Below are positions 14,880 to 59,492 of a stretch of DNA of 64,000 bases, one piece after another. Position 1 is the stretch's first letter. Each line of letters opens with the position of its first letter. The position numbers were made by a program, and so were the translations under genes. Under the pieces are notes generated by a model. The model searched no databases and was not told where the DNA came from. It was given only the letters and a program-made list of their open reading frames with translations. The stretch covers positions 124,001 to 188,000 of the IMG/VR virus record IMGVR_UViG_3300025869_002060. The stretch is one strand, 5' to 3'.

Positions 14880-15821
14880 ATGACACATTACCAAACGCTT
14901 GGCGTTCCGAATACAGCCAGTCCTGATGATATTAAGAAAGCATTCCGTGTATTAGCTGGAAAGCATCATCCTGATAAGGGCGGCGACGAAGAACAGTTCA
15001 AAAAAATTAATCAAGCACATGACGTACTAAAGAATCCTCAAACACGGAACCAGTACGATGCAGAGTTACAATTTGGCCATCAGGGTGGTCCTTTTCGTGC
15101 TGGCAGTGGAGCCAGAGGTCCTTTTGGTGGTAACTATGCTGGACCCGGAGGTGTACATTTTGGTTTTTCTAACGATGGCATGAATGCCGGAGGATTTGCT
15201 GATGGATCATTTCCTGAAGATATTGCTAACTTGTTTAGACAAATGCACGAAGGTCGCGATCCTAATCCTAACATGCACACAAAGCAAAGAGATAAACGCA
15301 ACAGAGATGTGCGTATCCGAATGAGTGTATCACTAGAGTCTTTGCTTGAAGTACAAAGTAAAACTATCAATGTACAAACCCCAGAAGGCCCAGGAGAAGC
15401 ATTGTATGTTACTATTCCAGTTTCAGCACGTAACGGAACTAAAATTAAGTATCCAGGTTTGGGAGACAACATGTTTAAGAGTATTCCCAGAGGTGACTTA
15501 TATATCGAAATAGCAGTTGACAACCATCCTAATTTTGTATATAATAATGATGACTTGCACACACAAATAGAAATAGATTCCTTCACCGCTGTTACAGGTG
15601 GCGAAAAAGAAATTGTAGGATTAGATGGTAATAGGTTTATGTTAAAGATACCTCCAGGTACACAACATGGAGCAAAATCACGAATACCAACACAAGGACT
15701 TTATAGGAATAATCATAAAGATACACGAGGTGACTTGTATATTATAACTAATGTTATAACTCCAACACTAACTGAGGAGCAAATACGCTCAGTAAAAGAC
15801 CTGGCTAAAAGTTTTAAATAA
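14880..15821 (+). CDS. dnaJ: DnaJ-class co-chaperone (class II/CbpA-like, no zinc finger)
   Basis: J-domain with HPD (KHHPDKGGD), G/F-rich linker, GDLY repeats in the C-terminal domain. Confidence 0.93.
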   Translation: MTHYQTLGVPNTASPDDIKKAFRVLAGKHHPDKGGDEEQFKKINQAHDVLKNPQTRNQYDAELQFGHQGGPFRAGSGARGPFGGNYAGPGGVHFGFSNDGMNAGGFADGSFPEDIANLFRQMHEGRDPNPNMHTKQRDKRNRDVRIRMSVSLESLLEVQSKTINVQTPEGPGEALYVTIPVSARNGTKIKYPGLGDNMFKSIPRGDLYIEIAVDNHPNFVYNNDDLHTQIEIDSFTAVTGGEKEIVGLDGNRFMLKIPPGTQHGAKSRIPTQGLYRNNHKDTRGDLYIITNVITPTLTEEQIRSVKDLAKSFK

Positions 15822-15847
15822 CTATAATTAACGAAAGAGATTGATAT

Positions 15848-18154
15848 ATGATACAAACCAATCCAGAGATTGAAAACATTGTACAACTAGCCACAAACTA
15901 TGCGGCAACAAATCAACACGAATATGTAACACTAGAGCATCTACTTTATGCTATTTGCAGTTATAAACCTTTTTATGATTTGTTAGAAATACAAAACACT
16001 GACACAGATGGTTTACTTGCAGACATTGATCATTATGTAAAAGCACAAGCACATCTTGTACCCAAGGAAATGAAGAAAGAAATCATTCCACGTAAAACAC
16101 ATGCACTTGAAAGAGTATTTAATCGTAGTTTTACACAGGTACTTTTCAGTGGACGTAGTCATGTACAAGTAATAGATTTGTTTCTGAGCATTGGACAAGA
16201 AAATAATAGCCATGCTGTTTATTTTATGGTCAAGTATGGTATAAATCGTGGAGAACTAGTTGACTTGTACAATGAACGCTGGAGTGGAATTACTACAAGA
16301 CAAGTAATGGCAGAAAGTCAAGCGGATCATGTATTAGCAGAGTTTTGTGATAACTTAAACAAACAAGCAGTTGATGGCAAAATTGATCCAGTTATTGGCA
16401 GAGATTTTGAGATTGAAGAAATTACCGAAGTACTAGCAAAACGTAACAAAAGTAATATATTAATGGTGGGCGATCCTGGTGTAGGTAAGACTGCTATTGC
16501 AGAAGGACTTGCTAAAAAGATTGTCGATAAGCAAGTGCCAGATTACTTGATTGACTTTACAGTATGGAATTTAGATATTAGTACATTACTTGCTGGAAGT
16601 AAGTATCGTGGAGAATTTGAAGAAAAACTACAAACAGTTATTAAAGCATTAAAAGCCAAGAAGAAAGTTATCCTGTTTATTGATGAAGCACACCAAATGC
16701 GTGGTGCTGGAGCAGGAAGCGGAAGCAGTGTTGACTTCTCTAATATGATTAAGCCAGCTATTAGTAAAGGTGAAATTAAAGTTGTTGCAAGTACAACATG
16801 GGAAGAATACAGCGAATCATTTGAAAAAGATCGTGCATTAATGCGTAGATTTTATCGTATGACAATTGAAGAACCTACGTCAGATGTAACAAAAGACATA
16901 CTACGTGGATTAAAGCCTTATTTTGAGGAGTTCCATAACGGTGAAATACATGACGATGCATTGGTTGCCGCAGTGGATCTAAGTGTGAGGTATCAAACTG
17001 ATAAGAAGTTGCCGGACAAAGCTATTGATTTAATTGACACAGCCTCAGCAAAAGTTAAACTTAAAAGAAGTAATTTTGTATTGCAACGCAAAGATATTAT
17101 TGAAGCAGTTAGCAAGGCAACTAAAATTCCAGTCGACCAACTAGGAACCGATCAAGGCAGTGTTGGTATTAGTAAACTTGAAGATCATATTAAGAGCAAA
17201 CTATTTGGTCAAGATCAAGTGGTTGATACATTGTTAGAAACTATCTATGTTAGCAAAGCCGGACTTAAAGCAATTAACAAGCCAATTGGTAGTTTTTTGT
17301 TTATTGGTCCTACAGGCACAGGTAAAACTGAACTAGCCAAATTAATAAGCGAACACATGAATATGAAATTGCTTAGATATGATATGAGTGAATACCAAGA
17401 GAAACACTCTGCCGCAAAACTAATTGGTGCACCTCCGGGTTATGTTGGGTATGATGATGCAAATCTTGGAGGAGGGTTATTAGTATCTGATATTGAGAAG
17501 AATCCTAACTGTATTATATTGTTTGACGAAATTGAAAAAGCACATAGAGATGTTAGTAATGTATTATTAGGATTATTAGATGAAGGTTCAGTTACTAGTT
17601 CAAATGGTAAGAAAGCAGACGCTCGTAATGCTATTATTATATTAACTTCAAACCTTGGAGCAACTGCTGGAGATCAGAATGCCATTGGCCTTGGTAGAGA
17701 TTTTGAAAAAGTTGGAGAAGACGATAAGGCTGTTAAACAATTCTTCAAACCTGAATTTAGAAACAGACTTGATGGAGTATGTAAGTTTAATAAACTTGAA
17801 ACAATGGCAATTAAAAAGATTATTTGCAAGTTTATCACTGAACTAAATGAATTACTTGTTGAGAAAGATCTAAAAATCCGTTTAACAGAAGAAGCAATTA
17901 AACATATTGCTGATGTTGGCTACGATCCTAAGATGGGAGCAAGACCATTACAGCGAACAATTAACAATCTTATTAAAATTCCGCTAAGTAAAAAGTTAAT
18001 ATTTGAATCAGTAGAGCCTAATCATATAATTATAGTTGATTACGTTAATGACGAGATTATTTTTAACGTTAAGTCTACAGAAGTAGACTTTGACCAACCT
18101 AAAGTGAACAACGATGGATACATCATACTGGATCAGTTTAAACCAAAAAGTTAA
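15848..18154 (+). CDS. clpA: ClpA-like Hsp100 ATPase
   Basis: Clp N-domain, two AAA+ modules (GDPGVGKT, FIDEAH; GPTGTGKT, LFDEIEK), IGL loop (NAIGLG), GARPL; no ClpB middle domain. Confidence 0.93.
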   Translation: MIQTNPEIENIVQLATNYAATNQHEYVTLEHLLYAICSYKPFYDLLEIQNTDTDGLLADIDHYVKAQAHLVPKEMKKEIIPRKTHALERVFNRSFTQVLFSGRSHVQVIDLFLSIGQENNSHAVYFMVKYGINRGELVDLYNERWSGITTRQVMAESQADHVLAEFCDNLNKQAVDGKIDPVIGRDFEIEEITEVLAKRNKSNILMVGDPGVGKTAIAEGLAKKIVDKQVPDYLIDFTVWNLDISTLLAGSKYRGEFEEKLQTVIKALKAKKKVILFIDEAHQMRGAGAGSGSSVDFSNMIKPAISKGEIKVVASTTWEEYSESFEKDRALMRRFYRMTIEEPTSDVTKDILRGLKPYFEEFHNGEIHDDALVAAVDLSVRYQTDKKLPDKAIDLIDTASAKVKLKRSNFVLQRKDIIEAVSKATKIPVDQLGTDQGSVGISKLEDHIKSKLFGQDQVVDTLLETIYVSKAGLKAINKPIGSFLFIGPTGTGKTELAKLISEHMNMKLLRYDMSEYQEKHSAAKLIGAPPGYVGYDDANLGGGLLVSDIEKNPNCIILFDEIEKAHRDVSNVLLGLLDEGSVTSSNGKKADARNAIIILTSNLGATAGDQNAIGLGRDFEKVGEDDKAVKQFFKPEFRNRLDGVCKFNKLETMAIKKIICKFITELNELLVEKDLKIRLTEEAIKHIADVGYDPKMGARPLQRTINNLIKIPLSKKLIFESVEPNHIIIVDYVNDEIIFNVKSTEVDFDQPKVNNDGYIILDQFKPKS

Positions 18155-25796: not shown

Positions 25797-25834
25797 AAAT
25801 ATGGCATTAGCATTATAGCAGTGTAAATACTGCT

Positions 25835-26569
25835 ATGAGCAACTATAATGCACAACAAGAAAAACTCGGTTTCGCATTAGTTAGTTCTAATCGGAACCGT
25901 ATTTTTTTCTACCACAAAAACTACGAAGTTACTAAACGTTTACAATTACATTTTTTACGAAATGATCTATTGTATCTAGTCCCTGTGACTTTAAAAATGT
26001 TGCACCGACAACGATTGCTTAACAGGAAGAAACAACAAAACAACAATCGTGTTGATAAAGAATTTGATTTTTATAGTTGTGTAAACTATACATTTAATAA
26101 TGCTAAAGTATTACAGGTTGAACTTGATGTTGCTCCGTTTAGGCAAAGAAAAATGCACATCATCCAAACTGCTACAGATGCCACCAACGAAGACAACAAC
26201 ATACATCAAAATTTGATATCAGCATCTAAGTATATTGAATCATTTAAAACAGCTATTGATCAACGAGAAGCAATACTAGACGAACAGTTTTCATATACTA
26301 TTAAAGGATACGAAATGTTCCAGACGTTTTGCCAAGAGCAATTTACAAATTCACAACTTGATAATATGTTTGAAATTGACATTGCAGACGAAAAACGATA
26401 TAAATCACAAATGCGTGAATTGCGTATAAAGGTAACAGATGCTATTATGGAAATGAACTTTACTGTTGATCCTGATACCTATAATGTACTGTTTAAAAAT
26501 ACAATAAAAGAAATTACCAACAAAGCAAACAAATACGAACAATCTGTGCTTGGAGCGGTAAATCAATGA
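25835..26569 (+). CDS. Cassette 1 partner protein (unknown)
   Basis: 244 aa; N-terminus resembles those of 27874 and 29779. Confidence 0.75.
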   Translation: MSNYNAQQEKLGFALVSSNRNRIFFYHKNYEVTKRLQLHFLRNDLLYLVPVTLKMLHRQRLLNRKKQQNNNRVDKEFDFYSCVNYTFNNAKVLQVELDVAPFRQRKMHIIQTATDATNEDNNIHQNLISASKYIESFKTAIDQREAILDEQFSYTIKGYEMFQTFCQEQFTNSQLDNMFEIDIADEKRYKSQMRELRIKVTDAIMEMNFTVDPDTYNVLFKNTIKEITNKANKYEQSVLGAVNQ

Positions 26570-27747
26570 TGACCGCTGAAGATTATTTTAAAGGAAATCG
26601 TTTAGTTGACAACAGTTACATTGGTATTGCACTTGACAACGAAGATATGGGAAAGTATGGGAACTATTGGCTATCAAGTTTTAAAAACATTCCTATGCTC
26701 AATGATATACGTAGTCGCAGTCTTAAATTTACCACGCCATGGTTAAACGATGAACACCCTGATTATATAAAATTACCCAAGTTATCAACTACTGCTAAAA
26801 AATTAGACGATATCTTAGACGAACGTGCAATTGAGCTACACAAAATTGCAATACGAGATAATAAAAAGATATGGATTATGTGGAGTGGTGGCATTGATTC
26901 AACAACCATGCTTACAGCATTTATTAAGAATATCCCAAGTAACGAATTAAAAGATCGATATAGTGTTATTATGAGTGCTAATAGTATTGCTGAGAACTAT
27001 TACTTTTTTAAGCACTATGTAGATGGAAAGTTTAATTTAATTAACTGGTTAAACTTAGACATCAGTTCTGAATTGTTTAAAGATACTATTGTACTACATG
27101 GAGATCCAGCGAATGCATTATTAAGTGTACCAACTGTGGCCGCATTTGCATCATTGGTTCCTAGCGGAGAACATTTACTTCCGTTTAGAGAGAACATCGG
27201 CACTTTAATTGATGGACTTGAAGCAATGGTAGTTGGCAATGGCAAAGAATCCTTACCTGGTTGGGCGGAATGGTATATTGAAAAGTTAGTTAATGCAATA
27301 CCAATTACTGACAATGCTACAAGTATTGCTTCGTTTTGGTGGTGGCATTATGTAAACTTTAAATGGCACGGAAGTATGTTACGCCCATTTTTCTTTACAA
27401 GAGAAAGCACTGATCAACCCATACACGAAGACGAGTTCAAGTACTATTATGATACAGTATTCTATGTTAATGAAGATTTCCAAAATTGGAGTTATAGTAA
27501 TATTGACGAAATAGTTAAAACACCAAGCGACTATAAACCATTAATGAGACAGTACATACATACTTTAACCAAGGACGATCTTTATTCAACCTATAAAAAG
27601 TTTATGGCCAGTAGACGCACAAACTTAAACCAAGCTATACTTGAACAAACACTTCCATTTGTATACGATTCTAATTGGATTGGACACAAGTTTGATAAGA
27701 ACTCCAAAAATATAGTACGAGAATTATTACATGCCTTTGAAGGATAG
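26566..27747 (+). CDS. Asparagine-synthetase-like PP-loop adenylating enzyme, paralog 1
   Basis: WSGGIDS PP-loop, LHGDPAN, WWWHYVNFK, QNWSYSN; no Ntn glutaminase domain. Confidence 0.75.
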   Translation: MMTAEDYFKGNRLVDNSYIGIALDNEDMGKYGNYWLSSFKNIPMLNDIRSRSLKFTTPWLNDEHPDYIKLPKLSTTAKKLDDILDERAIELHKIAIRDNKKIWIMWSGGIDSTTMLTAFIKNIPSNELKDRYSVIMSANSIAENYYFFKHYVDGKFNLINWLNLDISSELFKDTIVLHGDPANALLSVPTVAAFASLVPSGEHLLPFRENIGTLIDGLEAMVVGNGKESLPGWAEWYIEKLVNAIPITDNATSIASFWWWHYVNFKWHGSMLRPFFFTRESTDQPIHEDEFKYYYDTVFYVNEDFQNWSYSNIDEIVKTPSDYKPLMRQYIHTLTKDDLYSTYKKFMASRRTNLNQAILEQTLPFVYDSNWIGHKFDKNSKNIVRELLHAFEG

Positions 27748-27772
27748 AATTATAAGATCAGCAATTTTATTG

Positions 27773-27801
27773 TTGACAATCATAGCACTCACTGCTATAA
27801 T
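27773..27801 (+). promoter_or_regulatory. Consensus sigma70 promoter for cassettes 2-3
   Basis: TTGACA-17 bp-TATAAT, exact consensus. Confidence 0.85.
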
Positions 27802-27873
27802 GATAAATGTAATACCACCAGGTGATCCTGATTATCCACCGGGGCATACACTAGGAAGGCATATGTTACATTA

Positions 27874-28602
27874 ATGTTTGGTTTATTAAGTGTACATCAA
27901 AACTATTTTTTAACTGTTGGTGAATACAATTCACTTAAACGGACACAGCATATAATTGGCTCACAGTTGCCTTGTTTGTTTGTTGACTTTGATTTAATTC
28001 AAACACGTGATGCTGACAAAATATCTAAACTTAATTTTAAAGATTATGCTGGAAGTTTTAGACTTAAAAAGTTCCTTGAGTTAGATACAGTTGGTACTAA
28101 GATAGTTCCAAAGTTTGATGATGCTTTTATTAGTACACGTGAACACTTTGGTCTTAAACCTATTACTGACACACAAGAGATGATGGTTACTCACATATCT
28201 CTGTTGCATGAATTTATTAATATACATTGGAAAGAGCTTGATGTATATAAGAAGCATCGAGACAAAGGCAACGATCAAAAAATTAACGGTATAAATGCTT
28301 TTTCAGATTTTGTTATTGAACAGACCGGAGCCGACGGTTTTATTAACGAATTAGTTGAATACGAAACACAACAGATTCAAGCAAACACAGGTGTATTGGG
28401 AAATCATACAAAACACTTGCAACAGAGTTTAATGAATATAAACTATAGCAATGTTAACTTACACGATTTGATAGCAAGATTAAACCAAGAGATTCAAGCT
28501 ATTCCTCCAATCTTTGCATTTGGGCAAAAAAGGATAAGCGAAATGCTACAACGCCAAGCACAAAAAGCTCTGCTTATGGCAAGGAAATCAATGAATGCCT
28601 AG
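27874..28602 (+). CDS. Cassette 2 partner protein (unknown)
   Basis: 242 aa; overlaps the start of the following enzyme. Confidence 0.75.
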   Translation: MFGLLSVHQNYFLTVGEYNSLKRTQHIIGSQLPCLFVDFDLIQTRDADKISKLNFKDYAGSFRLKKFLELDTVGTKIVPKFDDAFISTREHFGLKPITDTQEMMVTHISLLHEFINIHWKELDVYKKHRDKGNDQKINGINAFSDFVIEQTGADGFINELVEYETQQIQANTGVLGNHTKHLQQSLMNINYSNVNLHDLIARLNQEIQAIPPIFAFGQKRISEMLQRQAQKALLMARKSMNA

Positions 28603-29782
28603 TGCTGAAGAATACTTTTACAAGAAAATTACTGACAGTATGGCCGACAGTCGGATGGTACAATCTATTGCTATGTATCCAACTGAGTTTAAAAACAAAA
28701 ATGCTACATATTGGCAGAGTTTAAATCGTTGTATTATTGGAGTAGCTGACTGGAGATCACGTGTAGGTAAATTTGAAAACCCATGGAATGCAAGTACTAG
28801 CCCAGAGTTTGCTCCGCCGGCACTTGCATATACTCCAGATACGTTTGAAGACATTGCAAACCACAGAGCATTAGAATTAATTGATGAAGCTAAAAATTCT
28901 AATCGTAGACTTCTTTTATTATGGAGTGGTGGCATTGATAGTACATTTGTACTTACAAGTTTTATTAAAAACATAGAACCTGCTGATAGAGAACTGATTA
29001 TTATATGTTGCAACTTTACTAGCATATTTGAAAACACACAGTTTTATGTTAACTACATTAGTAATCAATTTAGATGTATGCCGTACCAATACTTTGATTT
29101 AACTCCTGAATTGCTAGACAACTATATTGTAATACACGGAGACCCAGGTGACTGTTTACAAGGTCCTAGTATTCCTGCGTATGCAACATTTATTGAGCAA
29201 GGTGTACATAAAGAACCATGGAAAAACTATGTTGATCAAATAGCGGAAAGCATACAACCAGACCCAAGCCATCCATATTATGCAGAAGGATTTGGCAATT
29301 GGTTTACTCAAAGAGTTTGCGAAAACTTGGAAGAGATTCAACCCGAGAATGTTACAAGTATTGCAGACTGGTGGTGGTGGACCTACTATAACTTTAAGTG
29401 GGAATTTTCATGCCAACGTGCTTTCTTCTTTAGTCGTAGAGATCCAACAACAGAGTTTACTCCTGCACATATTGCAGACTTTGCTCGTAACACTTACTTT
29501 AACACGGCCGATTGGCAACATTGGAGTTATAGTAATCTTGACAATTTAATTGGCCTGGATAGAAGTAACCATAAACATTTTGCTCGTAATTATATACTCG
29601 AACTTGATGGCAATGATGTTTATTACTCAACTAAAATTAAAACAGCAGGAGCTCCAGCAGACATAATTACTAGGAGAGACAATGACATTCCTTTCTATTT
29701 TGACAAGAACTGGAAAGGGCATTATTGGTCAGAAACGGCTGTTGAAGAAGTGAGTATGTCATTATTAGGTAGATTTCAATGA
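28595..29782 (+). CDS. Asparagine-synthetase-like PP-loop adenylating enzyme, paralog 2
   Basis: WSGGIDS, IHGDPGDCLQG, WWWWTYYNFK, QHWSYSN. Confidence 0.75.
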   Translation: MPSAEEYFYKKITDSMADSRMVQSIAMYPTEFKNKNATYWQSLNRCIIGVADWRSRVGKFENPWNASTSPEFAPPALAYTPDTFEDIANHRALELIDEAKNSNRRLLLLWSGGIDSTFVLTSFIKNIEPADRELIIICCNFTSIFENTQFYVNYISNQFRCMPYQYFDLTPELLDNYIVIHGDPGDCLQGPSIPAYATFIEQGVHKEPWKNYVDQIAESIQPDPSHPYYAEGFGNWFTQRVCENLEEIQPENVTSIADWWWWTYYNFKWEFSCQRAFFFSRRDPTTEFTPAHIADFARNTYFNTADWQHWSYSNLDNLIGLDRSNHKHFARNYILELDGNDVYYSTKIKTAGAPADIITRRDNDIPFYFDKNWKGHYWSETAVEEVSMSLLGRFQ

Positions 29783-30465
29783 GCGAACTTTATGCATTGT
29801 ATAATGTTAAGGCAAATAAGTTTTTGGTAACTGATCGCAGTTATGAAATGCTAAAAACAATTCAGTTTATCTTTTCACATCGAATACTATTCTATTGTGT
29901 CAGATTGAATGATGTACACGGATATCGTGATGGTTTACTTGCTAAAGGAAGACATACCAAAATTGGATTTGCAGATCCACAATTGATTAATATTAGCACC
30001 GACATTCATGCAAAAAGTGATGGTAAAATTAAATTTGTATCCAGTCCAAATCACAGTGATGTAAACGAAAAATTTAGCAAACAAGCAGAATTCTATAGAG
30101 ACTTCTTACGTGTGTTTAACAAAGAATATGGATATTTTCAAGATATAGTACGTACACGTAGTCGTACACAAAAGAACGGCCTAACTCAATTGACAGAGTA
30201 TACTAAATTTTTAATGCCAGACGACGAAGCACTTCGTAACTTAATAGCTCAAGAGACTGACTATAACTTTAGTGTTATGAAATACTTGAGACAATTCAAA
30301 GGAGAGGTCATTGATAAACTACAGAGTCTTGATTTAGAACTAGAAGTAGGTGACATGGTTAAACAGTTAACACAAGAATTAAATAGTATTCCTGTTAAAT
30401 GTCACACTCAACGTTATGTAACACCTAAAGTATTGGAGTGGCTTGATGAAAACTATAATATGTGA
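29779..30465 (+). CDS. Cassette 3 partner protein (unknown)
   Basis: 228 aa; ATGA overlap; N-terminus like 25835 and 27874. Confidence 0.75.
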   Translation: MSELYALYNVKANKFLVTDRSYEMLKTIQFIFSHRILFYCVRLNDVHGYRDGLLAKGRHTKIGFADPQLINISTDIHAKSDGKIKFVSSPNHSDVNEKFSKQAEFYRDFLRVFNKEYGYFQDIVRTRSRTQKNGLTQLTEYTKFLMPDDEALRNLIAQETDYNFSVMKYLRQFKGEVIDKLQSLDLELEVGDMVKQLTQELNSIPVKCHTQRYVTPKVLEWLDENYNM

Positions 30466-30497
30466 ATGGAACAATATGATTGGAAGGAAGTAGGATT

Positions 30498-30755
30498 ATG
30501 AGTGACAACGAAGACATGAAAATTGACGATGTTCAAAAACAAATATGGAATCTAATAGATAGACAATTTGCCGAAGAAACATCACAAGAGCAACTGTATG
30601 TAACAGGTGCGGTGTTACTACAAACTGCTATTGAATTATACAGTGTAATATTAGAAGATGACGATATTCAAAGATTGTTTGATAGTGCTACTGACAGCAT
30701 TCCAGACCTCCGCCAACGAATGCAAGATCGTCTTGGAACACGAGTTATTCATTAA
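30498..30755 (+). CDS. Small acidic helical protein inserted in cassette 3
   Basis: ATG 30498 after AGGA; 85 aa. Confidence 0.7.
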   Translation: MSDNEDMKIDDVQKQIWNLIDRQFAEETSQEQLYVTGAVLLQTAIELYSVILEDDDIQRLFDSATDSIPDLRQRMQDRLGTRVIH

Positions 30756-31940
30756 ATGAAAGCCGTTGATCAACATATTGATGAAATTACTAACAATGCA
30801 TGTATGGTAGACAATATGCTTATTGAACACCTTGATGTTAAAAACCCATACGGAAATCATTGGCAACGATATAGCAGACTCAATATCGGAGTTAAAGATG
30901 TTAGGCCTCGTGTTGGTACGTTTACAACTCCATGGAACACACCTAATAGAGATCTTTGGAGAATGCCAGAATTATATTATATTGATGATAAACTATCAGA
31001 TGTACTTGATGAACGTGCAATCGAACTATTCAATTTGGCTAAAAACACCAATAGAGACATACACATTATGTGGTCAGGAGGAATTGACAGCTCAGGTGTA
31101 CTTGTGTCATTTCTTAAAACATTAGATCCAGCAGATAGAGATATTCTCACAGTAGTAATGAACACTGATAGTTACTTGGAGAATCCTGACTTTTACAGGA
31201 ACCATATCAGTAATAAACTAAAAATTAAATACCTCAATACTATTGATGTTAACAACGAATTCCTTAGTAAGAGCATGTTGTTACATGGTGATCCGGGTGA
31301 TTGTTTATACGGGCCAAGCATTGGCGCCTTTGCACACTTAATACCTGATGGGAAACACCTATTACCAGCAAACGAGAATAGACATTTAATTAAAACCTTT
31401 TATGACCGTCAGGTAAGCAGATGGGCACACCCAGACTTTGGTGAATGGTATGTTAACAAAGTTGCAGACAACTTTGCTGAAGCTGGTTTAGAAAATGCAA
31501 GTACTATTGCTGATTATTGGTGGTGGCATTATTTTAATCTCAAGTATCAATTCTCAATGCAGAGACCGTTACAGCATCTTAAAGGAAATTATAAAGATGC
31601 ACTTGAACCATCATTGTACGATCGTTTTATACGTGAAGTATTTTTTCACACAGATCGTATGCAACGTTGGAGTTATAGCAACTTACATACCTTCTATGAA
31701 AAGATACATCTTGGCGACCCTGGTACTAAATGGCAAGCAAGAGACTATCTATACGATTTTGATAAAAACGATCGATATTACTACCATAAGGTTAAGATAT
31801 CGAGTCAAGCGAGCGATAAAGAACGCAGAATGTTAGATATCAGTCCGTTTTATTACGATCGTTATAACATGGGACACTATCCATGGGAAGAAGGTGTTAC
31901 AGAAGCAATCACACACTTTTTGGAAGAATATCAGGGTTGA
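30756..31940 (+). CDS. Asparagine-synthetase-like PP-loop adenylating enzyme, paralog 3
   Basis: WSGGIDS, LHGDPGDCLYG, WWWHYFNLK, QRWSYSN. Confidence 0.75.
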   Translation: MKAVDQHIDEITNNACMVDNMLIEHLDVKNPYGNHWQRYSRLNIGVKDVRPRVGTFTTPWNTPNRDLWRMPELYYIDDKLSDVLDERAIELFNLAKNTNRDIHIMWSGGIDSSGVLVSFLKTLDPADRDILTVVMNTDSYLENPDFYRNHISNKLKIKYLNTIDVNNEFLSKSMLLHGDPGDCLYGPSIGAFAHLIPDGKHLLPANENRHLIKTFYDRQVSRWAHPDFGEWYVNKVADNFAEAGLENASTIADYWWWHYFNLKYQFSMQRPLQHLKGNYKDALEPSLYDRFIREVFFHTDRMQRWSYSNLHTFYEKIHLGDPGTKWQARDYLYDFDKNDRYYYHKVKISSQASDKERRMLDISPFYYDRYNMGHYPWEEGVTEAITHFLEEYQG

Positions 31941-31990: not shown

Positions 31991-32245
31991 ATGACTATGT
32001 TTAGCTCAGAACAAAAAGCAAAACTTACACAAGTAATCAATGAAGGGATTCAGGTCAAGCAAGAAGTAGAAGATCTGAATGCTGGACTTAGTGATACAGT
32101 TAAAGCTATTGCTGAGGAAATGGAAATTAAACCTTCTACTTTAAAAAAAGCAATTAATATTGCACACAAAAGTGGACTAGGTGATGCAAACGCAGAACAC
32201 GAGGTACTAAACGACATTCTTGAGACTGTCGGAAAGACCTTGTAA
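31991..32245 (+). CDS. Small dsDNA-binding protein (T4 DsbA/GapR-like)
   Basis: 84 aa helical, DTVKAIAEEMEIKPSTLKKAINIAHK; lies before the polymerase. Confidence 0.55.
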   Translation: MTMFSSEQKAKLTQVINEGIQVKQEVEDLNAGLSDTVKAIAEEMEIKPSTLKKAINIAHKSGLGDANAEHEVLNDILETVGKTL

Positions 32246-42273: not shown

Positions 42274-42513
42274 ATGAAGTCCGAAGTCACAGCAATATTC
42301 GACGATCTCGATCAATACCGTCAGTTTTGTGTGCAGTTTGGGAGGCCCTATAATGAACGGGATCTCTACAATAAGTCCAACAATCACTATGTTGATTTTT
42401 TGGCATTCAAGGAAGGCAAACGAATTCGTAACCACTGGAATAGCCAGTCCAAGAAGAAGCGACCGTTTGTGAAAAAGAGCAATTATAAAATGGCCAAGAG
42501 GAAACATGCGTAA
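42274..42513 (+). CDS. Small hypothetical protein
   Basis: 79 aa; AAGGA SD. Confidence 0.7.
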   Translation: MKSEVTAIFDDLDQYRQFCVQFGRPYNERDLYNKSNNHYVDFLAFKEGKRIRNHWNSQSKKKRPFVKKSNYKMAKRKHA

Positions 42514-43687
42514 ATTATTCTATATGGGTTTAGAACCCTACGAAGGTCGATACACTTTACAACTTCAAGATTGGAGCACTGAAGTGTTCGACCGCCGGGG
42601 GATTGACTATGTTGTCGTTCCCGGAACTACAATAGATGACACTAAAGCAATTAGTGTTGGGCAAGTACTAGATGCACATGGTCGTTCATACTTTGGTATG
42701 AGTCAGTTGATGAACCTGGTACAGATGATGCGAAATGGAGAATGTACTGGTGAAGATGTTGTATTCTTTGAAGACATGTTTCAGCCTGGTATGGAATCAT
42801 TACCTTATATCATGTGTCAGATACCAGAAGAGCAACGACCTAAGATTTTTCTACGTTGTTTAGCCCAGGCAATTGACCCAGATGACTTTGTTCATGTATG
42901 GGGTATGAGCAAGTGGATGTCATTGTACGAACAGATGTGCAACGAAATTCCTAATGTTCATATTCTAGCAACCAATGAAGAGATGGTTGCACACATGAAG
43001 ATTGCAAACTGGACTGCTCCAATTTATAACATCTCAGGTTTGAGTTTTGGTAAAGCAGAAGTTCAAAGACGTATTGATAACAAAATTAAACCGTGGACAG
43101 AACGTAGCGACAGAGTAGTATTTGCGGCTCGCTTTGACCAAGAGAAGCAACCAGACTTCTTTATGGATGTTATTGAAATGGTCAAAGAGAAAAGGCCTGA
43201 TGTTGAGTTTGCAGTACTAAGTGGTGGTCCATTGCGTAGTAATAATGAAAAGTATTTGGATCGAGCACTTGCAATGCAGGCTGAAGGTAAACTTACAATA
43301 CTGAAATACTTGCAAAAGAATGATTACTACTATACAGTAAATGATAGCAAAGTATTGTTTAATTGTGCATTGCAAGACTGGGTAAGCAATACTGTAAGTG
43401 AAGCAGATGCATTGGGTTGTAACGTGGTGTATCCTGCTTACAGAAGTTTTCCTGAAACGTTTGCAAATGATTATACACGTCTGTATACTCCGTGGAGCAA
43501 AGAAGATGCAGTAAGTAAAATCATGCAAGGTCTTTTGGAACCAAGTCCTAATATGGGTAAAATCAGTAACTGGACTGATGGTACTATTGATCGTATGATT
43601 GATATTATGGAAGGCAGTTACAAACACAATACTTGGTTACGAAGTGGTAACAGGTATCGTGATCATGTAGCGGAAGGGAAATACTAA
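42506..43687 (+). CDS. GT-B glycosyltransferase (GT4-like)
   Basis: VVFAARFDQEKQPDFF, FNCALQDWVSNTVSEADALGC, YRSFPE. Confidence 0.8.
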   Translation: MRKLFYMGLEPYEGRYTLQLQDWSTEVFDRRGIDYVVVPGTTIDDTKAISVGQVLDAHGRSYFGMSQLMNLVQMMRNGECTGEDVVFFEDMFQPGMESLPYIMCQIPEEQRPKIFLRCLAQAIDPDDFVHVWGMSKWMSLYEQMCNEIPNVHILATNEEMVAHMKIANWTAPIYNISGLSFGKAEVQRRIDNKIKPWTERSDRVVFAARFDQEKQPDFFMDVIEMVKEKRPDVEFAVLSGGPLRSNNEKYLDRALAMQAEGKLTILKYLQKNDYYYTVNDSKVLFNCALQDWVSNTVSEADALGCNVVYPAYRSFPETFANDYTRLYTPWSKEDAVSKIMQGLLEPSPNMGKISNWTDGTIDRMIDIMEGSYKHNTWLRSGNRYRDHVAEGKY

Positions 43688-43688
43688 G

Positions 43689-44687
43689 ATGCCTGAAAAC
43701 ACCGTATTAATTACCGGCAGTGATGGCTACGTTGGTAGCCATGTTGCTAAAGCATTTAAAGATATCAGTTGGTATGTGTGCGGTTTAGATCGCACTGGTG
43801 CAAATGAAAATGCACGTTCATACTGTAACGAGTTTTTACGTGCTGATTACGGTGAGAGTAAGGTCGTTGGAAAGTATATTGAAACTATCAAACCAGATGT
43901 TATTGTACATTGTGCTGGTACTAGTCTAGTAGGTCCAAGTGTTACAGATCCGCATGCCTACTATCAGAACAATGTACTTGGTACAATCAATTTATTAGAC
44001 AATATAATTAACGTACAAAAAGATAATTTACCTGTTGTGCTTTTTAGTAGTTCAGCAAGTGTTTATGGCAATCCCGAACAACTTCCAATCACAGAAGATA
44101 GCAAGATCAATCCTGTAAACCCATATGGTAATACAAAGTCAATAATTGAAACCATGCTCAAAGACTATGCTAGTGCATACGGATTGAACAGTGTATCATT
44201 TCGTTTCTTTAATGCCGCTGGTGCCAGTGAAGATCTTGGTCAAGTGTTTGGTGCTACTCATATTATTGCTCGCATACTTGAAGCCAAGTTACGCCAACGA
44301 CAGTTTACTTTGTATGGTACAGATTATAAAACTGAAGATGGTACTTGTGTTAGAGATTATGTACACGTAAAAGATATTGCTCAGGCACACCTAAACGCCG
44401 TTACAAAATACACAGCCGTTGGTGCCAATGCATTTAATCTTGGCACTAGCAAAGGATTCAGTAACCAAGAGATTATTGATGCGGTGGTAGAACAAATTGG
44501 CGAATTCGAAGTAGAAAAAGGACCACGCAGAGAAGGTGATCCAGATATGCTAATAGCCAGCAGTGATAAAGCAAAAACACAACTAGGTTGGGATCCAGTA
44601 AATAGTAACTTAGACACAATTATCAATGACGTATGGGCTTGGTATAACGTACTACTAGAGAAACAAAAAGAGCAAGAACAGGCATGA
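43689..44687 (+). CDS. galE: UDP-glucose 4-epimerase
   Basis: GSDGYVGS, FSSSASVYG, YGNTK (YxxxK), FRFFNAAGA, DGTCVRDYVHV, RREGDP. Confidence 0.9.
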   Translation: MPENTVLITGSDGYVGSHVAKAFKDISWYVCGLDRTGANENARSYCNEFLRADYGESKVVGKYIETIKPDVIVHCAGTSLVGPSVTDPHAYYQNNVLGTINLLDNIINVQKDNLPVVLFSSSASVYGNPEQLPITEDSKINPVNPYGNTKSIIETMLKDYASAYGLNSVSFRFFNAAGASEDLGQVFGATHIIARILEAKLRQRQFTLYGTDYKTEDGTCVRDYVHVKDIAQAHLNAVTKYTAVGANAFNLGTSKGFSNQEIIDAVVEQIGEFEVEKGPRREGDPDMLIASSDKAKTQLGWDPVNSNLDTIINDVWAWYNVLLEKQKEQEQA

Positions 44688-45277
44688 GTTTTAGTCATAT
44701 ACAGGAGTTTGAGGAGCAATTAGCACTATATACTGGTGCCAAGTGGGCCGTAATGACAGACACCTGTACCAATGCATTAGAACTATGTTTTAGGTACGAT
44801 GAAGTTAAAGAATGCCAGTTTAGTGCATATACCTACCTAAGCATTTATCAGTTATTACATAGATTGGATATCTCTTATACACTTACAGAAGAAGTATGGA
44901 GAGGCCAATATCATTTTGAAAATACCCGTATTTGGGATAGTGCAAGATTACTTAAAAAGAATATGTATCAACCAGGACAATTACAATGTTTAAGTTTTGG
45001 TTATGACAAACCCTTATATCTCGGTTGGGGTGGTGCGATCCTAACCGACGACCCGGCGTTCTACAAACATACGATTCAGCAACGTTATGACGGGCGGAAC
45101 CTCTCAGTTACTCCATGGGAAACAGAAATACTTCCACGTATTGCATTCCATATGAGACCTACCCCTGAGATTGCACTAGATGGACTAGAACGATTAAGGA
45201 CCGGAGATATAAGTAAACTTCCACCAAAGGCCGCTGACGAATTATATCCAAATGGAAAAGATATAAAATGGAAATAA
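44684..45277 (+). CDS. Short DegT/DnrJ/EryC1/StrS-family PLP protein
   Basis: EFEEQLALYTGAKWAVMTDTCTNALEL, WDSA, CLSFGYDKPLYLGWGGAILTDD; only 197 aa. Confidence 0.75.
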   Translation: MSFSHIQEFEEQLALYTGAKWAVMTDTCTNALELCFRYDEVKECQFSAYTYLSIYQLLHRLDISYTLTEEVWRGQYHFENTRIWDSARLLKKNMYQPGQLQCLSFGYDKPLYLGWGGAILTDDPAFYKHTIQQRYDGRNLSVTPWETEILPRIAFHMRPTPEIALDGLERLRTGDISKLPPKAADELYPNGKDIKWK

Positions 45278-46272: not shown

Positions 46273-46304
46273 AGAGCACAGTTTTTGGTGCTAGAAAGGA
46301 AGTT

Positions 46305-46733
46305 ATGTTTTTAAAGTTACTTGATCGATTAGGTCGAAAAAGAATTGTTTACGATAGGTTGGATGACGAGCCTTATCTTGAACGTTACTATGTGTTTATT
46401 AAAGAAAGAAAACACTTTCCTTTCAATATTTTCCTACACAAATTTCTTAAAAGCGATCCAGATGATTTACACGATCATCCTTGGGGATATGCTACACTTA
46501 TTCTTAAAGGTGGATATTGGGAGCATACCCCCGACGGAAAGTTTTGGAGAGGTCCCGGACATTTTAGAATGTGCAAGTCCAACAATACACACAGAATTGA
46601 ACTAGACCCTGATGTTCAAGCCTGGACATTGTTTATGCCCGGACCACAAAGGAAAGACTGGGGATTTATCAAAGACGGTAAATGGATTCAACACGAAAAA
46701 TATCTTTCATCTAGAAAAATGTTAAAGGAATGA
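46305..46733 (+). CDS. Cupin-fold protein
   Basis: FLHKFLKSDPDDLHDHPW...GGYWE...HRIEL; ATG 46305 after AAGGA. Confidence 0.7.
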   Translation: MFLKLLDRLGRKRIVYDRLDDEPYLERYYVFIKERKHFPFNIFLHKFLKSDPDDLHDHPWGYATLILKGGYWEHTPDGKFWRGPGHFRMCKSNNTHRIELDPDVQAWTLFMPGPQRKDWGFIKDGKWIQHEKYLSSRKMLKE

Positions 46734-48026: not shown

Positions 48027-48029
48027 TAT
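48001..48029 (+). promoter_or_regulatory. Sigma70-type promoter for queD-queE
   Basis: TTGACA-17 bp-TAGTAT. Confidence 0.6.
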
Positions 48030-48860: not shown

Positions 48861-48871
48861 AAAGGCACACT

Positions 48872-58271: not shown

Positions 58272-59240
58272 TTAAGCTTCTTTAATCTTGTTAACTAGTC
58301 CGTCTGCGAACATATGATCTAGTGTGTCGTATACACTTTCAGTTTTTGCACGGAAGTCTTCCATGTCAGCTTGTGAAAGATAAACAACGTCAACATTGTC
58401 TGACTCAAGGCGTGCCTTGTTCTTTTCAATGTCTAGTAGAGCTTCGCGACGCTCTTCTAAAGCGGCTTCTTGTGCGGCTTCTAGGAAAGCTTCTTTTAGC
58501 TCTGCATCAAATGATGCCCAAAGATCCTTATTAATTAACACTGTGGTTAAGAATAAGCTATGCTCTGTATTAATAACAGCCTTTGCAGTTTTGCTTGGCT
58601 GAATTGTTTGCTCAGAACCATATAAACGTGGGTATGTGCTTTCGCCAGCTACGATACGACCATCTCCGATAGCCGCTCCGATTTCTTCAATTAGAAGATC
58701 GCCAACAACGTCACAACCTAAGACTTTGAAAGTTTCTTTGGAAACTTCAGAGCCGGTACGTACTTTTTCTCCAGCTAGTTCAGAAAGGTTTTCAATTTTC
58801 TTACTAGAAGGTAGTACGCGGAAACCACCGGAGTAGGTAAAGCATAATGGCTGAGCATTGGTTTTGGATGCAAAGCCGTCACGTAGATTGTCACCAATCT
58901 CGCCATCTAGTACGCGAGCAACATGATCGTGATCATTAAACAAGAAAGGCATGTCTAATGCTAGTAGATCTTTGTGGTACTGGCTACCTAGTGTAGTGGT
59001 ATAAAGCTGAGTCATTTCTAGCTGACCTTCTTCAAGGTGCTTCATTAACTCATAGCGATATTGTGTGTTAACTTGGTCAATATTATGATATTTCTTGGCA
59101 TACTCGTCGCATGATAGAATTTCAATATTAATTGCGCCATCTGTCTTTTCACTGATTACTCTAGCGAAACGATTAGCGGCACGAATGAATATCTCAATTG
59201 GTTCATGTGCTAGTACCCAACGAAGTGTTCTTTTTTCCAT
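58272..59240 (-). CDS. dctP: TRAP transporter solute-binding protein DctP-like, no signal peptide
   Basis: ALDMPFLFNDHDH, YSGGFR, LAGEKVR, GESTY, TEHSLF; GGGAG SD before ATG 59240. Confidence 0.8.
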   Translation of the reverse strand: MEKRTLRWVLAHEPIEIFIRAANRFARVISEKTDGAINIEILSCDEYAKKYHNIDQVNTQYRYELMKHLEEGQLEMTQLYTTTLGSQYHKDLLALDMPFLFNDHDHVARVLDGEIGDNLRDGFASKTNAQPLCFTYSGGFRVLPSSKKIENLSELAGEKVRTGSEVSKETFKVLGCDVVGDLLIEEIGAAIGDGRIVAGESTYPRLYGSEQTIQPSKTAKAVINTEHSLFLTTVLINKDLWASFDAELKEAFLEAAQEAALEERREALLDIEKNKARLESDNVDVVYLSQADMEDFRAKTESVYDTLDHMFADGLVNKIKEA

Positions 59241-59492
59241 TTTAAATATTCTCCCGGGAATGTTAAAGATAAGCAATGTAATAACTCGATTTGGTACCAT
59301 TGCTATTACTGTGCTTAGTAATATTATTTATGCTAGAAGCAGATTTAGATACTTTTTAACTAGTATATTAAAAGGCCTTGTAATGATGGGGATCTGCTCT
59401 TTCAACTACATTTATTTATGGATAAAATATCAAAAAAATGTAATTTTTTTAGGTTTTCAATGATTTCAATAGGTTAGCACCCCATAAAAAGG

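What the first reader, a model, noticed from the sequence alone, without database searches (positions are those of the whole stretch)
25835..31940. Triplicated two-gene cassette: unknown partner plus glutaminase-less asparagine-synthetase-like PP-loop enzyme
Seen in sequence: three consecutive ~393 aa paralogs share WSGGIDS, HGDPxx, (W)WWxYxNxK and WSYSN motifs and lack any Ntn glutaminase domain. Each is preceded by a 228-244 aa protein, and these share a faint N-terminal pattern (FALVSSNRNRIFF...YEVTKRLQLHF / FGLLSVHQNYFL...YNSLKRTQHII / YALYNVKANKFL...YEMLKTIQFIF). Partners 1 and 2 overlap their enzyme start codons. The pair, not the enzyme alone, was duplicated twice and then diverged. Cassette 1 follows a TAAATA late-type motif; cassettes 2-3 follow a perfect sigma70 promoter. 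Established: this fold (AsnB synthetase domain, lasso cyclase, beta-lactam synthetase, QueC relatives) adenylates a carboxylate and forms an amide. Inference: these are dedicated enzyme-partner pairs that make amide or isopeptide bonds. The partner could be the substrate, an adaptor or the amine donor. Possible substrates are the acidic virion proteins just upstream, or CDG from the FolE-QueD-QueE pathway, which has no QueC in this window. I know of no described phage system with this architecture.
Basis: partly seen in the sequence, partly recalled or inferred. Interest (0 to 1): 0.85.

Follow-up and report, generated by a model that had tools for sequence, protein, structure and literature searches.

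The report
Triplicated phage PP-loop enzyme–partner gene pair
An uncultured marine jumbo phage carries three diverged copies of an old, widespread and completely uncharacterised two-gene unit, a fast-evolving helper protein of unknown fold followed by an ATP-using enzyme related to asparagine synthetase but without its glutamine-splitting half, whose chemistry can be guessed but whose target is unknown.

Summary
Window 25835-31940 encodes three paralogous PP-loop enzymes (393, 395 and 394 aa; 33-39% identical; invariant WSGGIDS, HGDP, WWW.Y.N.K and WSYSN). Each is preceded by a 228-244 aa partner.

The partners are barely alike pairwise. They do join one family through intermediates from related viral contigs.

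The pair is an ancient unit. In 80 informative viral enzyme copies, 65 have a partner-family ORF directly upstream, usually overlapping by 4-14 nt. Partner orthology tracks enzyme orthology. Partners evolve about twice as fast as the enzymes. Duplication has recurred independently in other lineages.

The enzyme model (pLDDT 93.7) is nearest to AsnB-type synthetase domains, but only distantly. The window enzymes have no Pfam hit, and no GenBank phage holds a relative. The partner model (pLDDT 92.9) has no PDB match.

A signal-peptide-less DctP-like carboxylate-binding protein travels with the pair in many lineages and is also present in this window.

Best guess: heteromeric ATP-dependent carboxylate-activating ligases whose partner sets specificity. 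The substrate is unknown. This is a new variant of a known enzyme kind.

The parts
25824..25829 (+). TAAATA motif 5 nt before the P1 start codon; a candidate phage (late-type) promoter element
   Evidence: Present. In the window, 10 of 29 + strand copies lie within 60 nt upstream of ORF starts against 1.8 expected. Function is untested, and this copy is unusually close to the ATG.
25835..26569 (+). Partner 1 (244 aa), the fastest-diverging cassette
   Evidence: ORF. Member of the partner family. Stop overlaps the E1 start by 4 nt. 38-42% identical to its L014/L015 orthologues, where E1 is 64-66%.
26566..27747 (+). Enzyme 1 (393 aa), PP-loop ATP pyrophosphatase of the E1 orthologous group
   Evidence: SGGIDS and the other invariant motifs. 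The E1 group sits on a long branch in the tree.
27773..27801 (+). Perfect sigma70-type promoter (TTGACA-17-TATAAT, TG-extended -10) ahead of P2-E2-P3-ORFX-E3
   Evidence: 12/12 match. 5 such sites in the window against 0.05 expected.
27874..28602 (+). Partner 2 (242 aa)
   Evidence: ORF. AF2 model pLDDT 92.9: N-terminal small alpha/beta domain plus a long helical bundle. No PDB fold match, best E 0.94. Overlaps the E2 start by 8 nt.
28595..29782 (+). Enzyme 2 (395 aa), the most typical family member
   Evidence: AF2 pLDDT 93.7. Foldseek best PDB match is ASNS/AsnB, E 6e-4. BFVD TM 0.75-0.84 to uncultured-phage proteins. 194 homologues; the profile of E1-E3 (A1) finds 1420 representatives.
29779..30465 (+). 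Partner 3 (228 aa); its start overlaps the E2 stop by 4 nt
   Evidence: ORF. Partner family member. 51-60% identical to its L001/L014/L017 orthologues.
30480..30755 (+). ORF X (91 aa), inserted between P3 and E3; not part of the ancestral cassette
   Evidence: Found only in copies of this same phage (L007-L012); absent where P3 overlaps E3 in relatives. No family hit.
30756..31940 (+). Enzyme 3 (394 aa), E3 orthologous group
   Evidence: Motifs. Tree.
58272..59300 (-). DctP-like (TRAP solute-binding fold) protein without a signal peptide; a candidate third component encoded about 26 kb away
   Evidence: PF03480. Best PDB relatives are TRAP DctP subunits, with Arg kept in GGFRVL. 38-44% identical homologues lie within 0.1-3 kb of the pair in 17 other loci, and every full-length one starts at M..IRWVIAHEP with no leader.

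Best explanation
Each cassette encodes a two-subunit enzyme.

The 393-395 aa protein is a PP-loop ATP pyrophosphatase. It binds ATP through SGGIDS, adenylates a carboxyl (or carbonyl) group of its substrate, and lets an amine displace AMP to give an amide. The amine would be ammonia or another amine, since no glutaminase is present. This chemistry is inferred from the nearest folds.

The 228-244 aa partner is a non-catalytic subunit made in 1:1 amounts by translational coupling. It has a conserved N-terminal alpha/beta module and a rapidly diverging helical bundle. It most likely docks on the enzyme and sets which substrate or target is accepted. The three old, co-diverged pairs would therefore be three specificities of one chemistry.

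The substrate is most likely a small carboxylate metabolite rather than Asp, handed over or sequestered by the cytoplasmic DctP-like binding protein that accompanies the pair in many lineages.

Shown: the pair is the evolutionary unit; the enzyme has a PP-loop fold and no glutaminase; the partner has no catalytic signature; the DctP-like linkage exists. Inferred: complex formation, amide chemistry, the partner's specificity role, and the nature of the substrate.
For: - Pairing: 65 of 80 informative viral enzyme copies have a partner-family ORF directly upstream. All 68 unique partner-family ORFs are adjacent to an enzyme. Overlaps of 4-14 nt are the rule.
- Co-diversification: 286 of 393 cognate agreements against 168 by chance. 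E1, E2 and E3 form old orthologous groups, and there are independent expansions elsewhere.
- One in-frame partner-enzyme fusion, L069.
- Partner: mean column identity 18%, no invariant residue, confident model, no PDB match. It keeps about half the identity of its enzyme between orthologues.
- Enzyme: confident model. The nearest solved folds all adenylate a carboxylate: ASNS/AsnB, TsnB9, beta-lactam synthetase, LarE, NadE. There are weak PF00733 and PF01171 hits in distant members.
- Small-molecule hint: DctP-like proteins lacking signal peptides and keeping the carboxylate-binding Arg region lie next to the pair in 17 loci and occur in this window. Cupin, 2OG-oxygenase, Rieske, desaturase and PP-binding neighbours appear in other lineages.
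Against: - No direct evidence of complex formation or of any activity.
- The fold match to AsnB is distant (TM 0.35), and sequence similarity to solved PP-loop enzymes is confined to the P-loop.
- The DctP-like gene is 26 kb away in this phage and is linked in only 8 of 37 viral lineages.
- In most viral lineages the pair's constant neighbours are DNA polymerase B and a DsbA-like regulator. That may be mere synteny, but it could point to a nucleic-acid role.
- Bacterial relatives have an upstream small ORF that is not detectably homologous to the phage partner.
- A specificity subunit with no conserved binding residues is an argument from absence.
Confidence: 0.4

Rival explanations
1. The partner is the protein substrate. 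The enzyme adenylates a carboxylate (a metabolite, or a carboxyl of the partner) and ligates it to an amine of its cognate partner. This would be analogous to Cap9 modifying the CD-NTase and to the proposed QatC-QatB reaction. The three cassettes would then make three modified effector proteins.
For: There is precedent for a PP-loop enzyme bound to a co-encoded, motif-less helical partner that is its substrate (PMC13279940, PMC13376578, bioRxiv 10.1101/2025.04.06.647259). The strict 1:1 genetic coupling and co-diversification fit. A mostly conserved Lys in the N-terminal YxxLKxxQ motif could be an acceptor.
Against: The partner has no invariant residue and no Gly-2 or other terminal motif. Its N-terminus is modelled as a structured strand, not a flexible tail. 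The enzyme is not of the QueC family, and PADLOC finds no QatB or QatC relation. The conserved Lys is replaced in several members.
Confidence: 0.2
2. A conflict module. The enzyme modifies a host or phage macromolecule (tRNA, protein or DNA base) during takeover or counter-defence. The hypervariable partner is either the target-recognition adaptor or a regulator or inhibitor of a potentially toxic enzyme. Arms-race pressure would drive the duplication and fast evolution.
For: - Recurrent independent duplication and fast partner evolution.
- Sporadic distribution in unrelated bacteria, including predators and epibionts.
- Location just after the tail-fibre gene of prophage-like or tailocin-like regions in Undibacterium, Xanthomonas and Comamonas. 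From general knowledge, this is a typical position for cargo genes.
- An antitoxin-like arrangement, with a small overlapping upstream gene.
- Cassettes 2-3 follow a consensus host-type promoter, like the ClpB, DNA polymerase and FolE operons.
- Many PP-loop enzymes act on tRNA (established knowledge).
Against: No hit to any PADLOC defence model. No nucleic-acid-binding domain was recognised in the enzyme or the partner. The small-molecule-type neighbours (DctP-like, cupin, oxygenases) fit metabolite chemistry better.
Confidence: 0.15
3. The enzymes replace the missing QueC. They amidate 7-carboxy-7-deazaguanine (CDG, as base, nucleotide or in DNA) made by the FolE-QueD-QueE block at 45574-49744, giving 7-amido-type deazaguanines. 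The three pairs would make three derivatives.
For: The window has FolE, a cupin, a phosphoribosyltransferase, QueD-like and QueE-like genes but no QueC or TGT hit. QueC chemistry is PP-loop adenylation of the CDG carboxylate (established; PMC13279940). That block and cassettes 2-3 both follow perfect sigma70-type promoters. FolE lies 7 kb from the pair in L081.
Against: No QueD, QueE or PRTase homologue lies within 10 kb of the pair in any of the other fetched pair-bearing loci (L001-L163). No contig other than the window's own genome appears in both the enzyme and the QueE or FolE hit lists, although those lists are truncated. The bacterial loci surveyed show no recurrent deazaguanine genes among their neighbour families. 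The QueC-like PHROG match covers only the P-loop. The rest of the 228 kb genome was not searched for QueC or DpdA.
Confidence: 0.12
4. Ordinary metabolism. These are ammonia-dependent asparagine or NAD synthetases that boost host pools, and the upstream ORFs are unrelated neighbours.
For: One relative was auto-named NH3-dependent NAD+ synthetase by JGI. A cytidylyltransferase-fold protein lies five genes upstream.
Against: No hit to the Asn_synthase, NAD_synthase or NCBIfam equivalog models. Three diverged paralogs, each co-evolving with a dedicated partner, are not expected for a housekeeping step.
Confidence: 0.03

Closest known systems
Synthetase domain of class II amidotransferases (AsnB/ASNS, beta-lactam synthetase, carbapenam synthetase, TsnB9)
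   Same: PP-loop SGGxDS. Best Foldseek matches in PDB (8sue_B E 6e-4, 1ct9, 7ylz, 1mc1). A few distant family members weakly hit PF00733. The presumed chemistry is carboxylate adenylation followed by amide formation.
   Different: There is no N-terminal Ntn glutaminase domain, active or degenerate. The window proteins miss PF00733 entirely, and TM is only about 0.35. The family has its own aromatic-rich motifs (WWW.Y.N.K, WSYSN) and an obligate separate partner of unrelated fold.
QatB-QatC and Cap9-CD-NTase (QueC-family enzymes that bind and modify a partner protein)
   Same: A PP-loop enzyme genetically and, in those systems, physically paired with a motif-less, largely helical partner that has no structural relatives (PMC13279940).
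   Different: Those enzymes are QueC-family with a Zn site. [quoted passage not shown] They are bacterial defence systems. Here the enzyme is nearest to AsnB by fold, the partner N-terminus is structured and lacks Gly-2, and PADLOC shows no relation.
LarE, NadE and QueC (stand-alone carboxylate-adenylating PP-loop enzymes)
   Same: The P-loop region is the only significant sequence match to solved structures. Like them, there is no amidotransferase domain.
   Different: Those are 220-290 aa homo-oligomers without a dedicated partner. The family here is about 390 aa, with an extra N-terminal extended segment and a C-terminal helical region.
Lasso-peptide cyclase with its B protein
   Same: An AsnB-related ATP-dependent amide-forming enzyme encoded next to a protein of about 200 aa.
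   Different: The partner has no conserved Cys/His/Asp protease triad. There is no short precursor gene. The cyclases keep a degenerate N-terminal domain (established knowledge), which is absent here.

Membership tests
Asparagine synthetase B / class II glutamine amidotransferase family | N-terminal Ntn glutaminase domain with catalytic Cys at position 2 | tested here: not met
   The enzymes start MMTAE, MPSAE and MKAVD and are 393-395 aa. The partners start MSNY, MFGL and MSEL and are modelled as a small alpha/beta domain plus a helical bundle, not an Ntn sandwich.
Asparagine synthetase B / class II glutamine amidotransferase family | Match to Pfam Asn_synthase (PF00733) at the curated threshold | tested here: not met
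   No Pfam hit at E<=1 for E1-E3. Only 5 of 58 distant relatives hit, with best E 4e-5.
Asparagine synthetase B / class II glutamine amidotransferase family | Fold of the C-terminal synthetase domain | tested here: inconclusive
   ASNS and AsnB are the top PDB hits, but with E 6e-4 to 4e-3, TM 0.28-0.35 and rmsd about 10 A.
PP-loop ATP pyrophosphatase (adenine nucleotide alpha hydrolase) superfamily | SGGxDS pyrophosphate-binding loop at the end of the first strand of a Rossmann-like sheet | tested here: met
   WSGGIDS is invariant in 74 sequences. It follows strand 105-109 in the model. The P-loop matches LarE, NadE, GuaA, QueC and AsnB.
QueC / QatC / Cap9 family (PF06508) | QueC-family sequence membership | tested here: not met
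   No Pfam or NCBIfam QueC hit. The PHROG QueC-like match is E 1e-3 to 3e-2; in E1 and E2 it spans only about 20 residues around the P-loop. QueC 3bl5 scores E 0.065 on the P-loop only.
QatBC / type IV CBASS protein deazaguanylation | Partner with a disordered N-terminal tail ending in an essential Gly motif | tested here: not met
   Partner N-termini lack Gly-2. Residues 2-6 are modelled as a strand at pLDDT about 96.
QatBC / type IV CBASS protein deazaguanylation | Stable enzyme-partner complex | not testable with these tools
   No multimer prediction or experiment was available. The only evidence is genetic coupling and one fusion.
Lasso peptide biosynthesis (B protease plus C cyclase) | Partner with a transglutaminase-type Cys-His-Asp triad and a short precursor peptide gene | tested here: not met
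   No invariant or near-invariant Cys, His or Asp in 49 partners. No conserved short ORF: ORF X is phage-specific.
NH3-dependent NAD+ synthetase (NadE) | Sequence membership in the NAD_synthase models | tested here: not met
   No Pfam or NCBIfam NadE hit. Only P-loop level similarity.

The most novel reading that the evidence does not exclude
The pair is a programmable ligation system used in virus-host conflict. A hypervariable partner of a previously unseen fold directs a new branch of PP-loop ligases to attach a carboxylate metabolite, held by a cytoplasmic DctP-like protein, onto different macromolecular or small-molecule targets. Phages and predatory or epibiotic bacteria would multiply and diversify the pairs to change targets.
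Probability: 0.15. Interest if true: 0.85.

Novelty: new variant of a known kind. Interest (0 to 1): 0.62.

Why it matters
The enzyme family is large: 1420 representatives at 50% identity, 880 of them at E<=1e-10. It has no Pfam model, no characterised member and no relative in about 50,000 GenBank phage genomes. Even so, it is conserved next to the DNA polymerase in a whole clade of uncultured jumbo phages, and it recurs in many bacterial phyla.

Its obligate partner has a confidently predicted fold with no solved relative. Working out the substrate would do three things. It would assign function to a widespread pair of dark-matter genes. It would add a new subunit architecture to the PP-loop ligases, whose repurposing for protein modification in immunity was only recently discovered. 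It might also explain why a transporter-type binding protein has been moved into the cytoplasm by phages.

Cultured bacteria carrying distant versions, such as Neolewinella persica, Aquimarina, Tenacibaculum and Bernardetia, make it experimentally approachable.

Tried and rejected
- megablast and tblastn of the region and of E2, plus two distant relatives, against GenBank phages: no match.
- Pfam, NCBIfam, PHROGs and PADLOC on all seven ORFs: only P-loop-level hits.
- Profile search of PDB sequences with A1 and A5: P-loop only.
- Partner fold search in PDB: nothing. Partner profile search of 5.8 billion proteins: 7 unannotated hits.
- Homology between the phage partner and the small upstream ORFs of bacterial loci: rejected by hhalign, with probabilities of 3% or less.
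- Homology between the window's cupin (46260-46733) and the cupin that accompanies the bacterial enzymes: rejected.
- Linkage to FolE, QueD and QueE: not found. Contig-level co-occurrence could not be decided, because hit lists are cut at 80.
- Fusion evidence. P0141 (553 aa) could not be confirmed as a fusion, because the partner profile does not hit it. L069 is a real in-frame junction, but it is a single case at a contig edge.
- 'Virion protein' status of the upstream acidic proteins: no support.
- A genome scan with the distant alignment A5 failed for lack of a conserved stretch, so A3 was used instead.
- The Ntn-glutaminase-remnant idea for the partner: rejected on the predicted fold and the absence of Cys-2.
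- Literature searches found no description of this family.

Full report
**What is there.** Window 25835-31940 holds, all on the + strand: P1 (244 aa), E1 (393 aa), a 126-nt spacer, P2 (242 aa), E2 (395 aa), P3 (228 aa), a 91 aa ORF X, and E3 (394 aa).
- P1/E1 overlap by 4 nt, P2/E2 by 8 nt and E2/P3 by 4 nt.
It occurs only in copies of this same phage. In relatives P3 overlaps E3 directly.
- The three enzymes are 33-39% identical and share invariant WSGGIDS, HGDP, WWW.Y.N.K and QxWSYSN.
- None of the six proteins has Cys-2 or room for an Ntn glutaminase domain.

**Origin of the window.** The window is part of a 228 kb metagenomic contig (JGI 3300025869, IMG/VR UViG_3300025869_002060). Its family B DNA polymerase is 42-50% identical to those of Sinorhizobium phage Phosso, Agrobacterium phage Atu_ph07 and Rak2-like jumbo phages.

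**Are the partners related?** Pairwise the signal is marginal: E=0.002, E=0.01 and none. I fetched 72 distinct viral loci encoding enzyme relatives and collected the ORF immediately upstream of each enzyme.
- 62 of 71 unique upstream ORFs, including P1, P2 and P3, link into one family by phmmer.
- An iterated profile recovers 68 unique members.
- The family is very divergent: mean column identity 18%, with no invariant residue. It has a recognisable N-terminal motif (aromatic-G/A-L, N.F, Y..LK..Q) and a variable helical remainder.

**Is the pair the unit?** Yes.
- 8 of the 88 unique viral enzyme copies sit at a contig edge. Of the other 80, 65 have a partner-family ORF directly upstream, 5 follow another enzyme (E-E), and 10 follow some other ORF.
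- 29 of 37 lineages show the pairing. Every partner-family ORF found is adjacent to an enzyme, two of them downstream in a P-E-E-P arrangement.
- Stop/start overlaps of 4-14 nt are typical, even for enzymes only 25-30% identical to E2.
- Between genomes with several pairs, the best-matching partner sits in front of the best-matching enzyme in 286 of 393 comparisons, against 168 expected by chance. The genomes are related, so this is not an independent-sample statistic.
- The enzyme tree resolves E1-, E2- and E3-type orthologous groups that predate the divergence of this jumbo-phage subclade. It also shows independent expansions in L041/43/44/46 and in L025/50.
- Orthologous partners keep about half the identity of their enzymes, for example 37-42% against 64-67%.
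- One ORF (L069) joins the C-terminal half of a partner, a Gly-X-Y-like linker and the enzyme in one frame. It is a single case at a contig edge. A second suspected fusion (P0141) was not confirmed.

**What is the enzyme?**
- By sequence it hits no Pfam or NCBIfam model. PHROG matches (PAPS reductase, QueC-like) are weak and cover little more than the P-loop region.
- A profile of E1-E3 finds 1420 representatives of 50% clusters (880 at E<=1e-10) among 1.8 billion proteins.
- The 120 best relatives of E2 listed come from metagenome assemblies, lack any precomputed Pfam domain, and are mostly unnamed or 'hypothetical protein'.
- GenBank phages hold no relative of E2 or of two distant members used as queries.
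- The AF2 model of E2 is confident (pLDDT 93.7, pTM 0.92).
- Its best PDB matches are human ASNS and E. coli AsnB, then TsnB9, beta-lactam synthetase, LarE and NadE. They are distant: E 6e-4 at best and TM about 0.35.
- In BFVD it matches uncultured-phage proteins at TM 0.75-0.84. Some are auto-named 'Asparagine synthase'.
- Five of 58 distant relatives weakly hit PF00733 and three hit PF01171.
- Profile searches of PDB sequences match only the P-loop.
- The safe statement is this: a new family of the PP-loop ATP pyrophosphatase superfamily, nearest in fold to AsnB-type synthetase domains, without any glutaminase.
- All the nearest folds adenylate a carboxylate and then substitute AMP by N or S. 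That chemistry is inferred, not shown.

**What is the partner?** The AF2 model of P2 is confident (pLDDT 92.9). It has a strand-strand-helix-strand N-terminal domain and long helices from residue 99 to 241. Foldseek finds no PDB relative (best E 0.94). A profile search of 5.8 billion proteins finds 7 unannotated hits. It has no conserved catalytic-type residues, no Gly-2 and no conserved terminus.

**Context in phages.** In the subclade the order is conserved: ClpB-like, then a cytidylyltransferase-fold protein, then unannotated proteins, then two or three partner-enzyme pairs, then a DsbA-like 84 aa ORF, DNA polymerase B and a methyltransferase. Across 37 viral lineages the commonest neighbours are DNA polymerase B (20), the DsbA-like ORF (19), a 144 aa protein that carries a ferritin domain in L003 and L005 (17), and a methyltransferase-type protein (17). 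This may be inherited synteny.

**Regulatory signals.** Cassettes 2-3 follow a perfect, TG-extended sigma70-type promoter. The other four perfect copies in the window precede ClpB, the DsbA-like/polymerase genes, the FolE block and a DUF2201 gene. There are 5 sites against 0.05 expected. Cassette 1 follows a TAAATA element, a motif enriched upstream of ORF starts.

- The FolE, cupin, PRTase, QueD-like and QueE-like block is real (45574-49744), and no QueC or TGT was seen in the window.
- However, no homologue of those genes lies within 10 kb of the pair in any other fetched locus, except FolE in L081.
- Contig-level co-occurrence could not be decided from truncated lists.
- The acidic proteins upstream have no structural-protein hit.

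**An unexpected companion.**
- Homologues (38-44% identical; a few more distant paralogues 27-30%) of the window's DctP-like protein (58272-59300, minus strand) lie within 0.1-3 kb of the pair in 17 loci. These come from 8 viral lineages, from Bdellovibrio-like MAG contigs, and from L081-L083. They are often immediately adjacent.
- Every full-length copy starts directly at M..IRWVIAHEP, the first strand of the TRAP binding-protein fold, without a signal peptide.
- The window protein keeps Arg in the GGFR segment. In the alignment this matches GGSR of a TRAP binding protein. From general knowledge, that region carries the ligand-carboxylate-binding arginine.
- A cytoplasmic carboxylate binder next to a carboxylate-activating enzyme points to a small-molecule substrate.

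**Context in bacteria.**
- A scan of GTDB species genomes finds 97 relatives at 22-29% identity. Carriers include Saprospiraceae, Flavobacteriaceae, Cytophagales, Bdellovibrionota, Saccharibacteria, Planctomycetota, Acidobacteriota, Chloroflexota, and alpha-, beta- and gammaproteobacteria. Most are single copy.
- The commonest neighbour is a Cupin_2 protein, in 43 of 76 loci. There is also a small unannotated ORF directly upstream of the enzyme. That ORF is not detectably homologous to the phage partner.
- In Undibacterium, Xanthomonas and Comamonas the module follows baseplate genes of a prophage-like or tailocin-like region. In Undibacterium and Xanthomonas a short tail-fibre-type gene comes directly before it. 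In Undibacterium a cupin and a 2OG-oxygenase-like protein lie just downstream.
- Other distant loci add PP-binding carrier proteins, Rieske and desaturase-like proteins.

**Comparison with known systems.** The nearest conceptual parallel is QatB-QatC and Cap9-CdnD. In those systems a QueC-family PP-loop enzyme binds a motif-less partner and (Cap9 shown, QatC proposed) conjugates CDG to its N-terminal glycine. Here the enzyme is not QueC-family, the partner lacks the tail and the Gly motif, and PADLOC shows no relation. It may work in a similar manner, but it is not a member of that family.

**Verdict.**
- I commit at 0.4 to heteromeric ATP-dependent carboxylate-activating ligases. The fast-evolving partner sets specificity, and the substrate is a small carboxylate metabolite.
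- Rivals: partner as protein substrate (0.2), a conflict module acting on a macromolecule (0.15), CDG amidation (0.12), and housekeeping Asn or NAD synthesis (0.03).
- It is a new variant of a known enzyme kind. It is widespread and wholly uncharacterised.

**Limits.**
- ORFs in fetched loci were called mechanically.
- Locus sets are the best 80 per scan.
- Lineages were defined at 70% enzyme identity.
- No multimer prediction, model coordinates or experiments were available.

Noticed in passing
window 58272-59300 (-): A DctP-like TRAP solute-binding-fold protein with no signal peptide. Homologues sit next to the enzyme-partner pair in 17 other loci, and every full-length one lacks a leader. 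A cytoplasmic, phage-borne version of a periplasmic binding protein is unusual in itself.
   Followed up: partly
L025, L041, L043, L044, L046, L050 (for example L041:14626-15588): In these loci the pair-linked DctP-like gene appears as two consecutive ORFs of about 156 and 162 aa (N-half and C-half). This could be an in-frame stop, recoding or a true split. It was not examined.
   Followed up: no
window 45574-49744: The block reads FolE, a 157 aa cupin (phrog_4786, cysteine-dioxygenase-like), a phosphoribosyltransferase, a 189 aa unknown, QueD-like and QueE-like. No QueC or TGT/DpdA hit was seen in the window. The PRTase suggests a 7-deazapurine may be handled at the nucleotide level rather than by base exchange in DNA.
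   Followed up: partly
window 15517, 27773, 31937, 45294, 61899 (+): Five perfect TTGACA-17-TATAAT promoters, against 0.05 expected by chance. They precede ClpB, cassettes 2-3, the DsbA-like/DNA polymerase genes, the FolE block and a DUF2201 gene. This looks like a set of host-RNA-polymerase-read operons.
   Followed up: partly
window, for example 12894, 14420, 15815, 20420, 22545, 25824, 48030 (+): TAAATA is half as frequent as expected overall (52 against 98). Yet 10 of 29 + strand copies lie within 60 nt upstream of ORF starts (1.8 expected). That fits a T4-late-like promoter element.
   Followed up: partly
window 30480-30755 (+): ORF X (91 aa, acidic) is inserted between P3 and E3 in this phage only. 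It has no homologue in any fetched locus of another phage and no family hit.
   Followed up: yes
window 14880-18154 (+): The phage encodes its own DnaJ (313 aa) and a ClpB-like double-AAA chaperone (768 aa). The ClpB-like gene is conserved at this position in related jumbo-phage contigs.
   Followed up: no
window 42506-45277 (+): A glycosyltransferase family 1 gene, an NAD-dependent epimerase/dehydratase and a short DegT-like aminotransferase fragment form a nucleotide-sugar gene set directly upstream of the FolE block.
   Followed up: no
window 31991-32245 (+): An 84 aa ORF with weak similarity to T4 DsbA-type transcriptional regulators (phrog_639, PF11126). It is conserved between the last cassette and DNA polymerase B in 19 of 37 viral lineages.
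   Followed up: partly
L069:18-1814: A single ORF joins the C-terminal half of a partner, a short Gly-X-Y-like linker and a full enzyme domain. It lies at a contig edge, so the partner N-terminus is missing.
   Followed up: partly
L146, L153, L157, L136 (for example L153:5913-12686): In Xanthomonas, Undibacterium and Comamonas genomes the enzyme follows baseplate genes of a prophage-like or tailocin-like region. In Xanthomonas and Undibacterium a 197-199 aa upstream ORF and a short tail-fibre-type gene come directly before it. In Undibacterium (L153) a cupin and a 2OG-Fe(II)-oxygenase-like protein lie just downstream.
   Followed up: partly
L092, L106, L117, L150, L154 (for example L154:4488-5942): In several alphaproteobacterial-type and other bacterial loci a longer enzyme (415-481 aa) is preceded by a 473-510 aa ORF. 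Only the L154 ORF was annotated; it is a full-length GIDA/TrmFO-like flavoprotein. This may be a hint of a nucleic-acid link or only local synteny.
   Followed up: no
window 3333-4211 (-), 8881-9291 (+), 9936-10697 (-): Ornithine/aspartate carbamoyltransferase-like, peptidyl-tRNA hydrolase PTH2-like and PhoH-like genes lie in the left part of the window.
   Followed up: no
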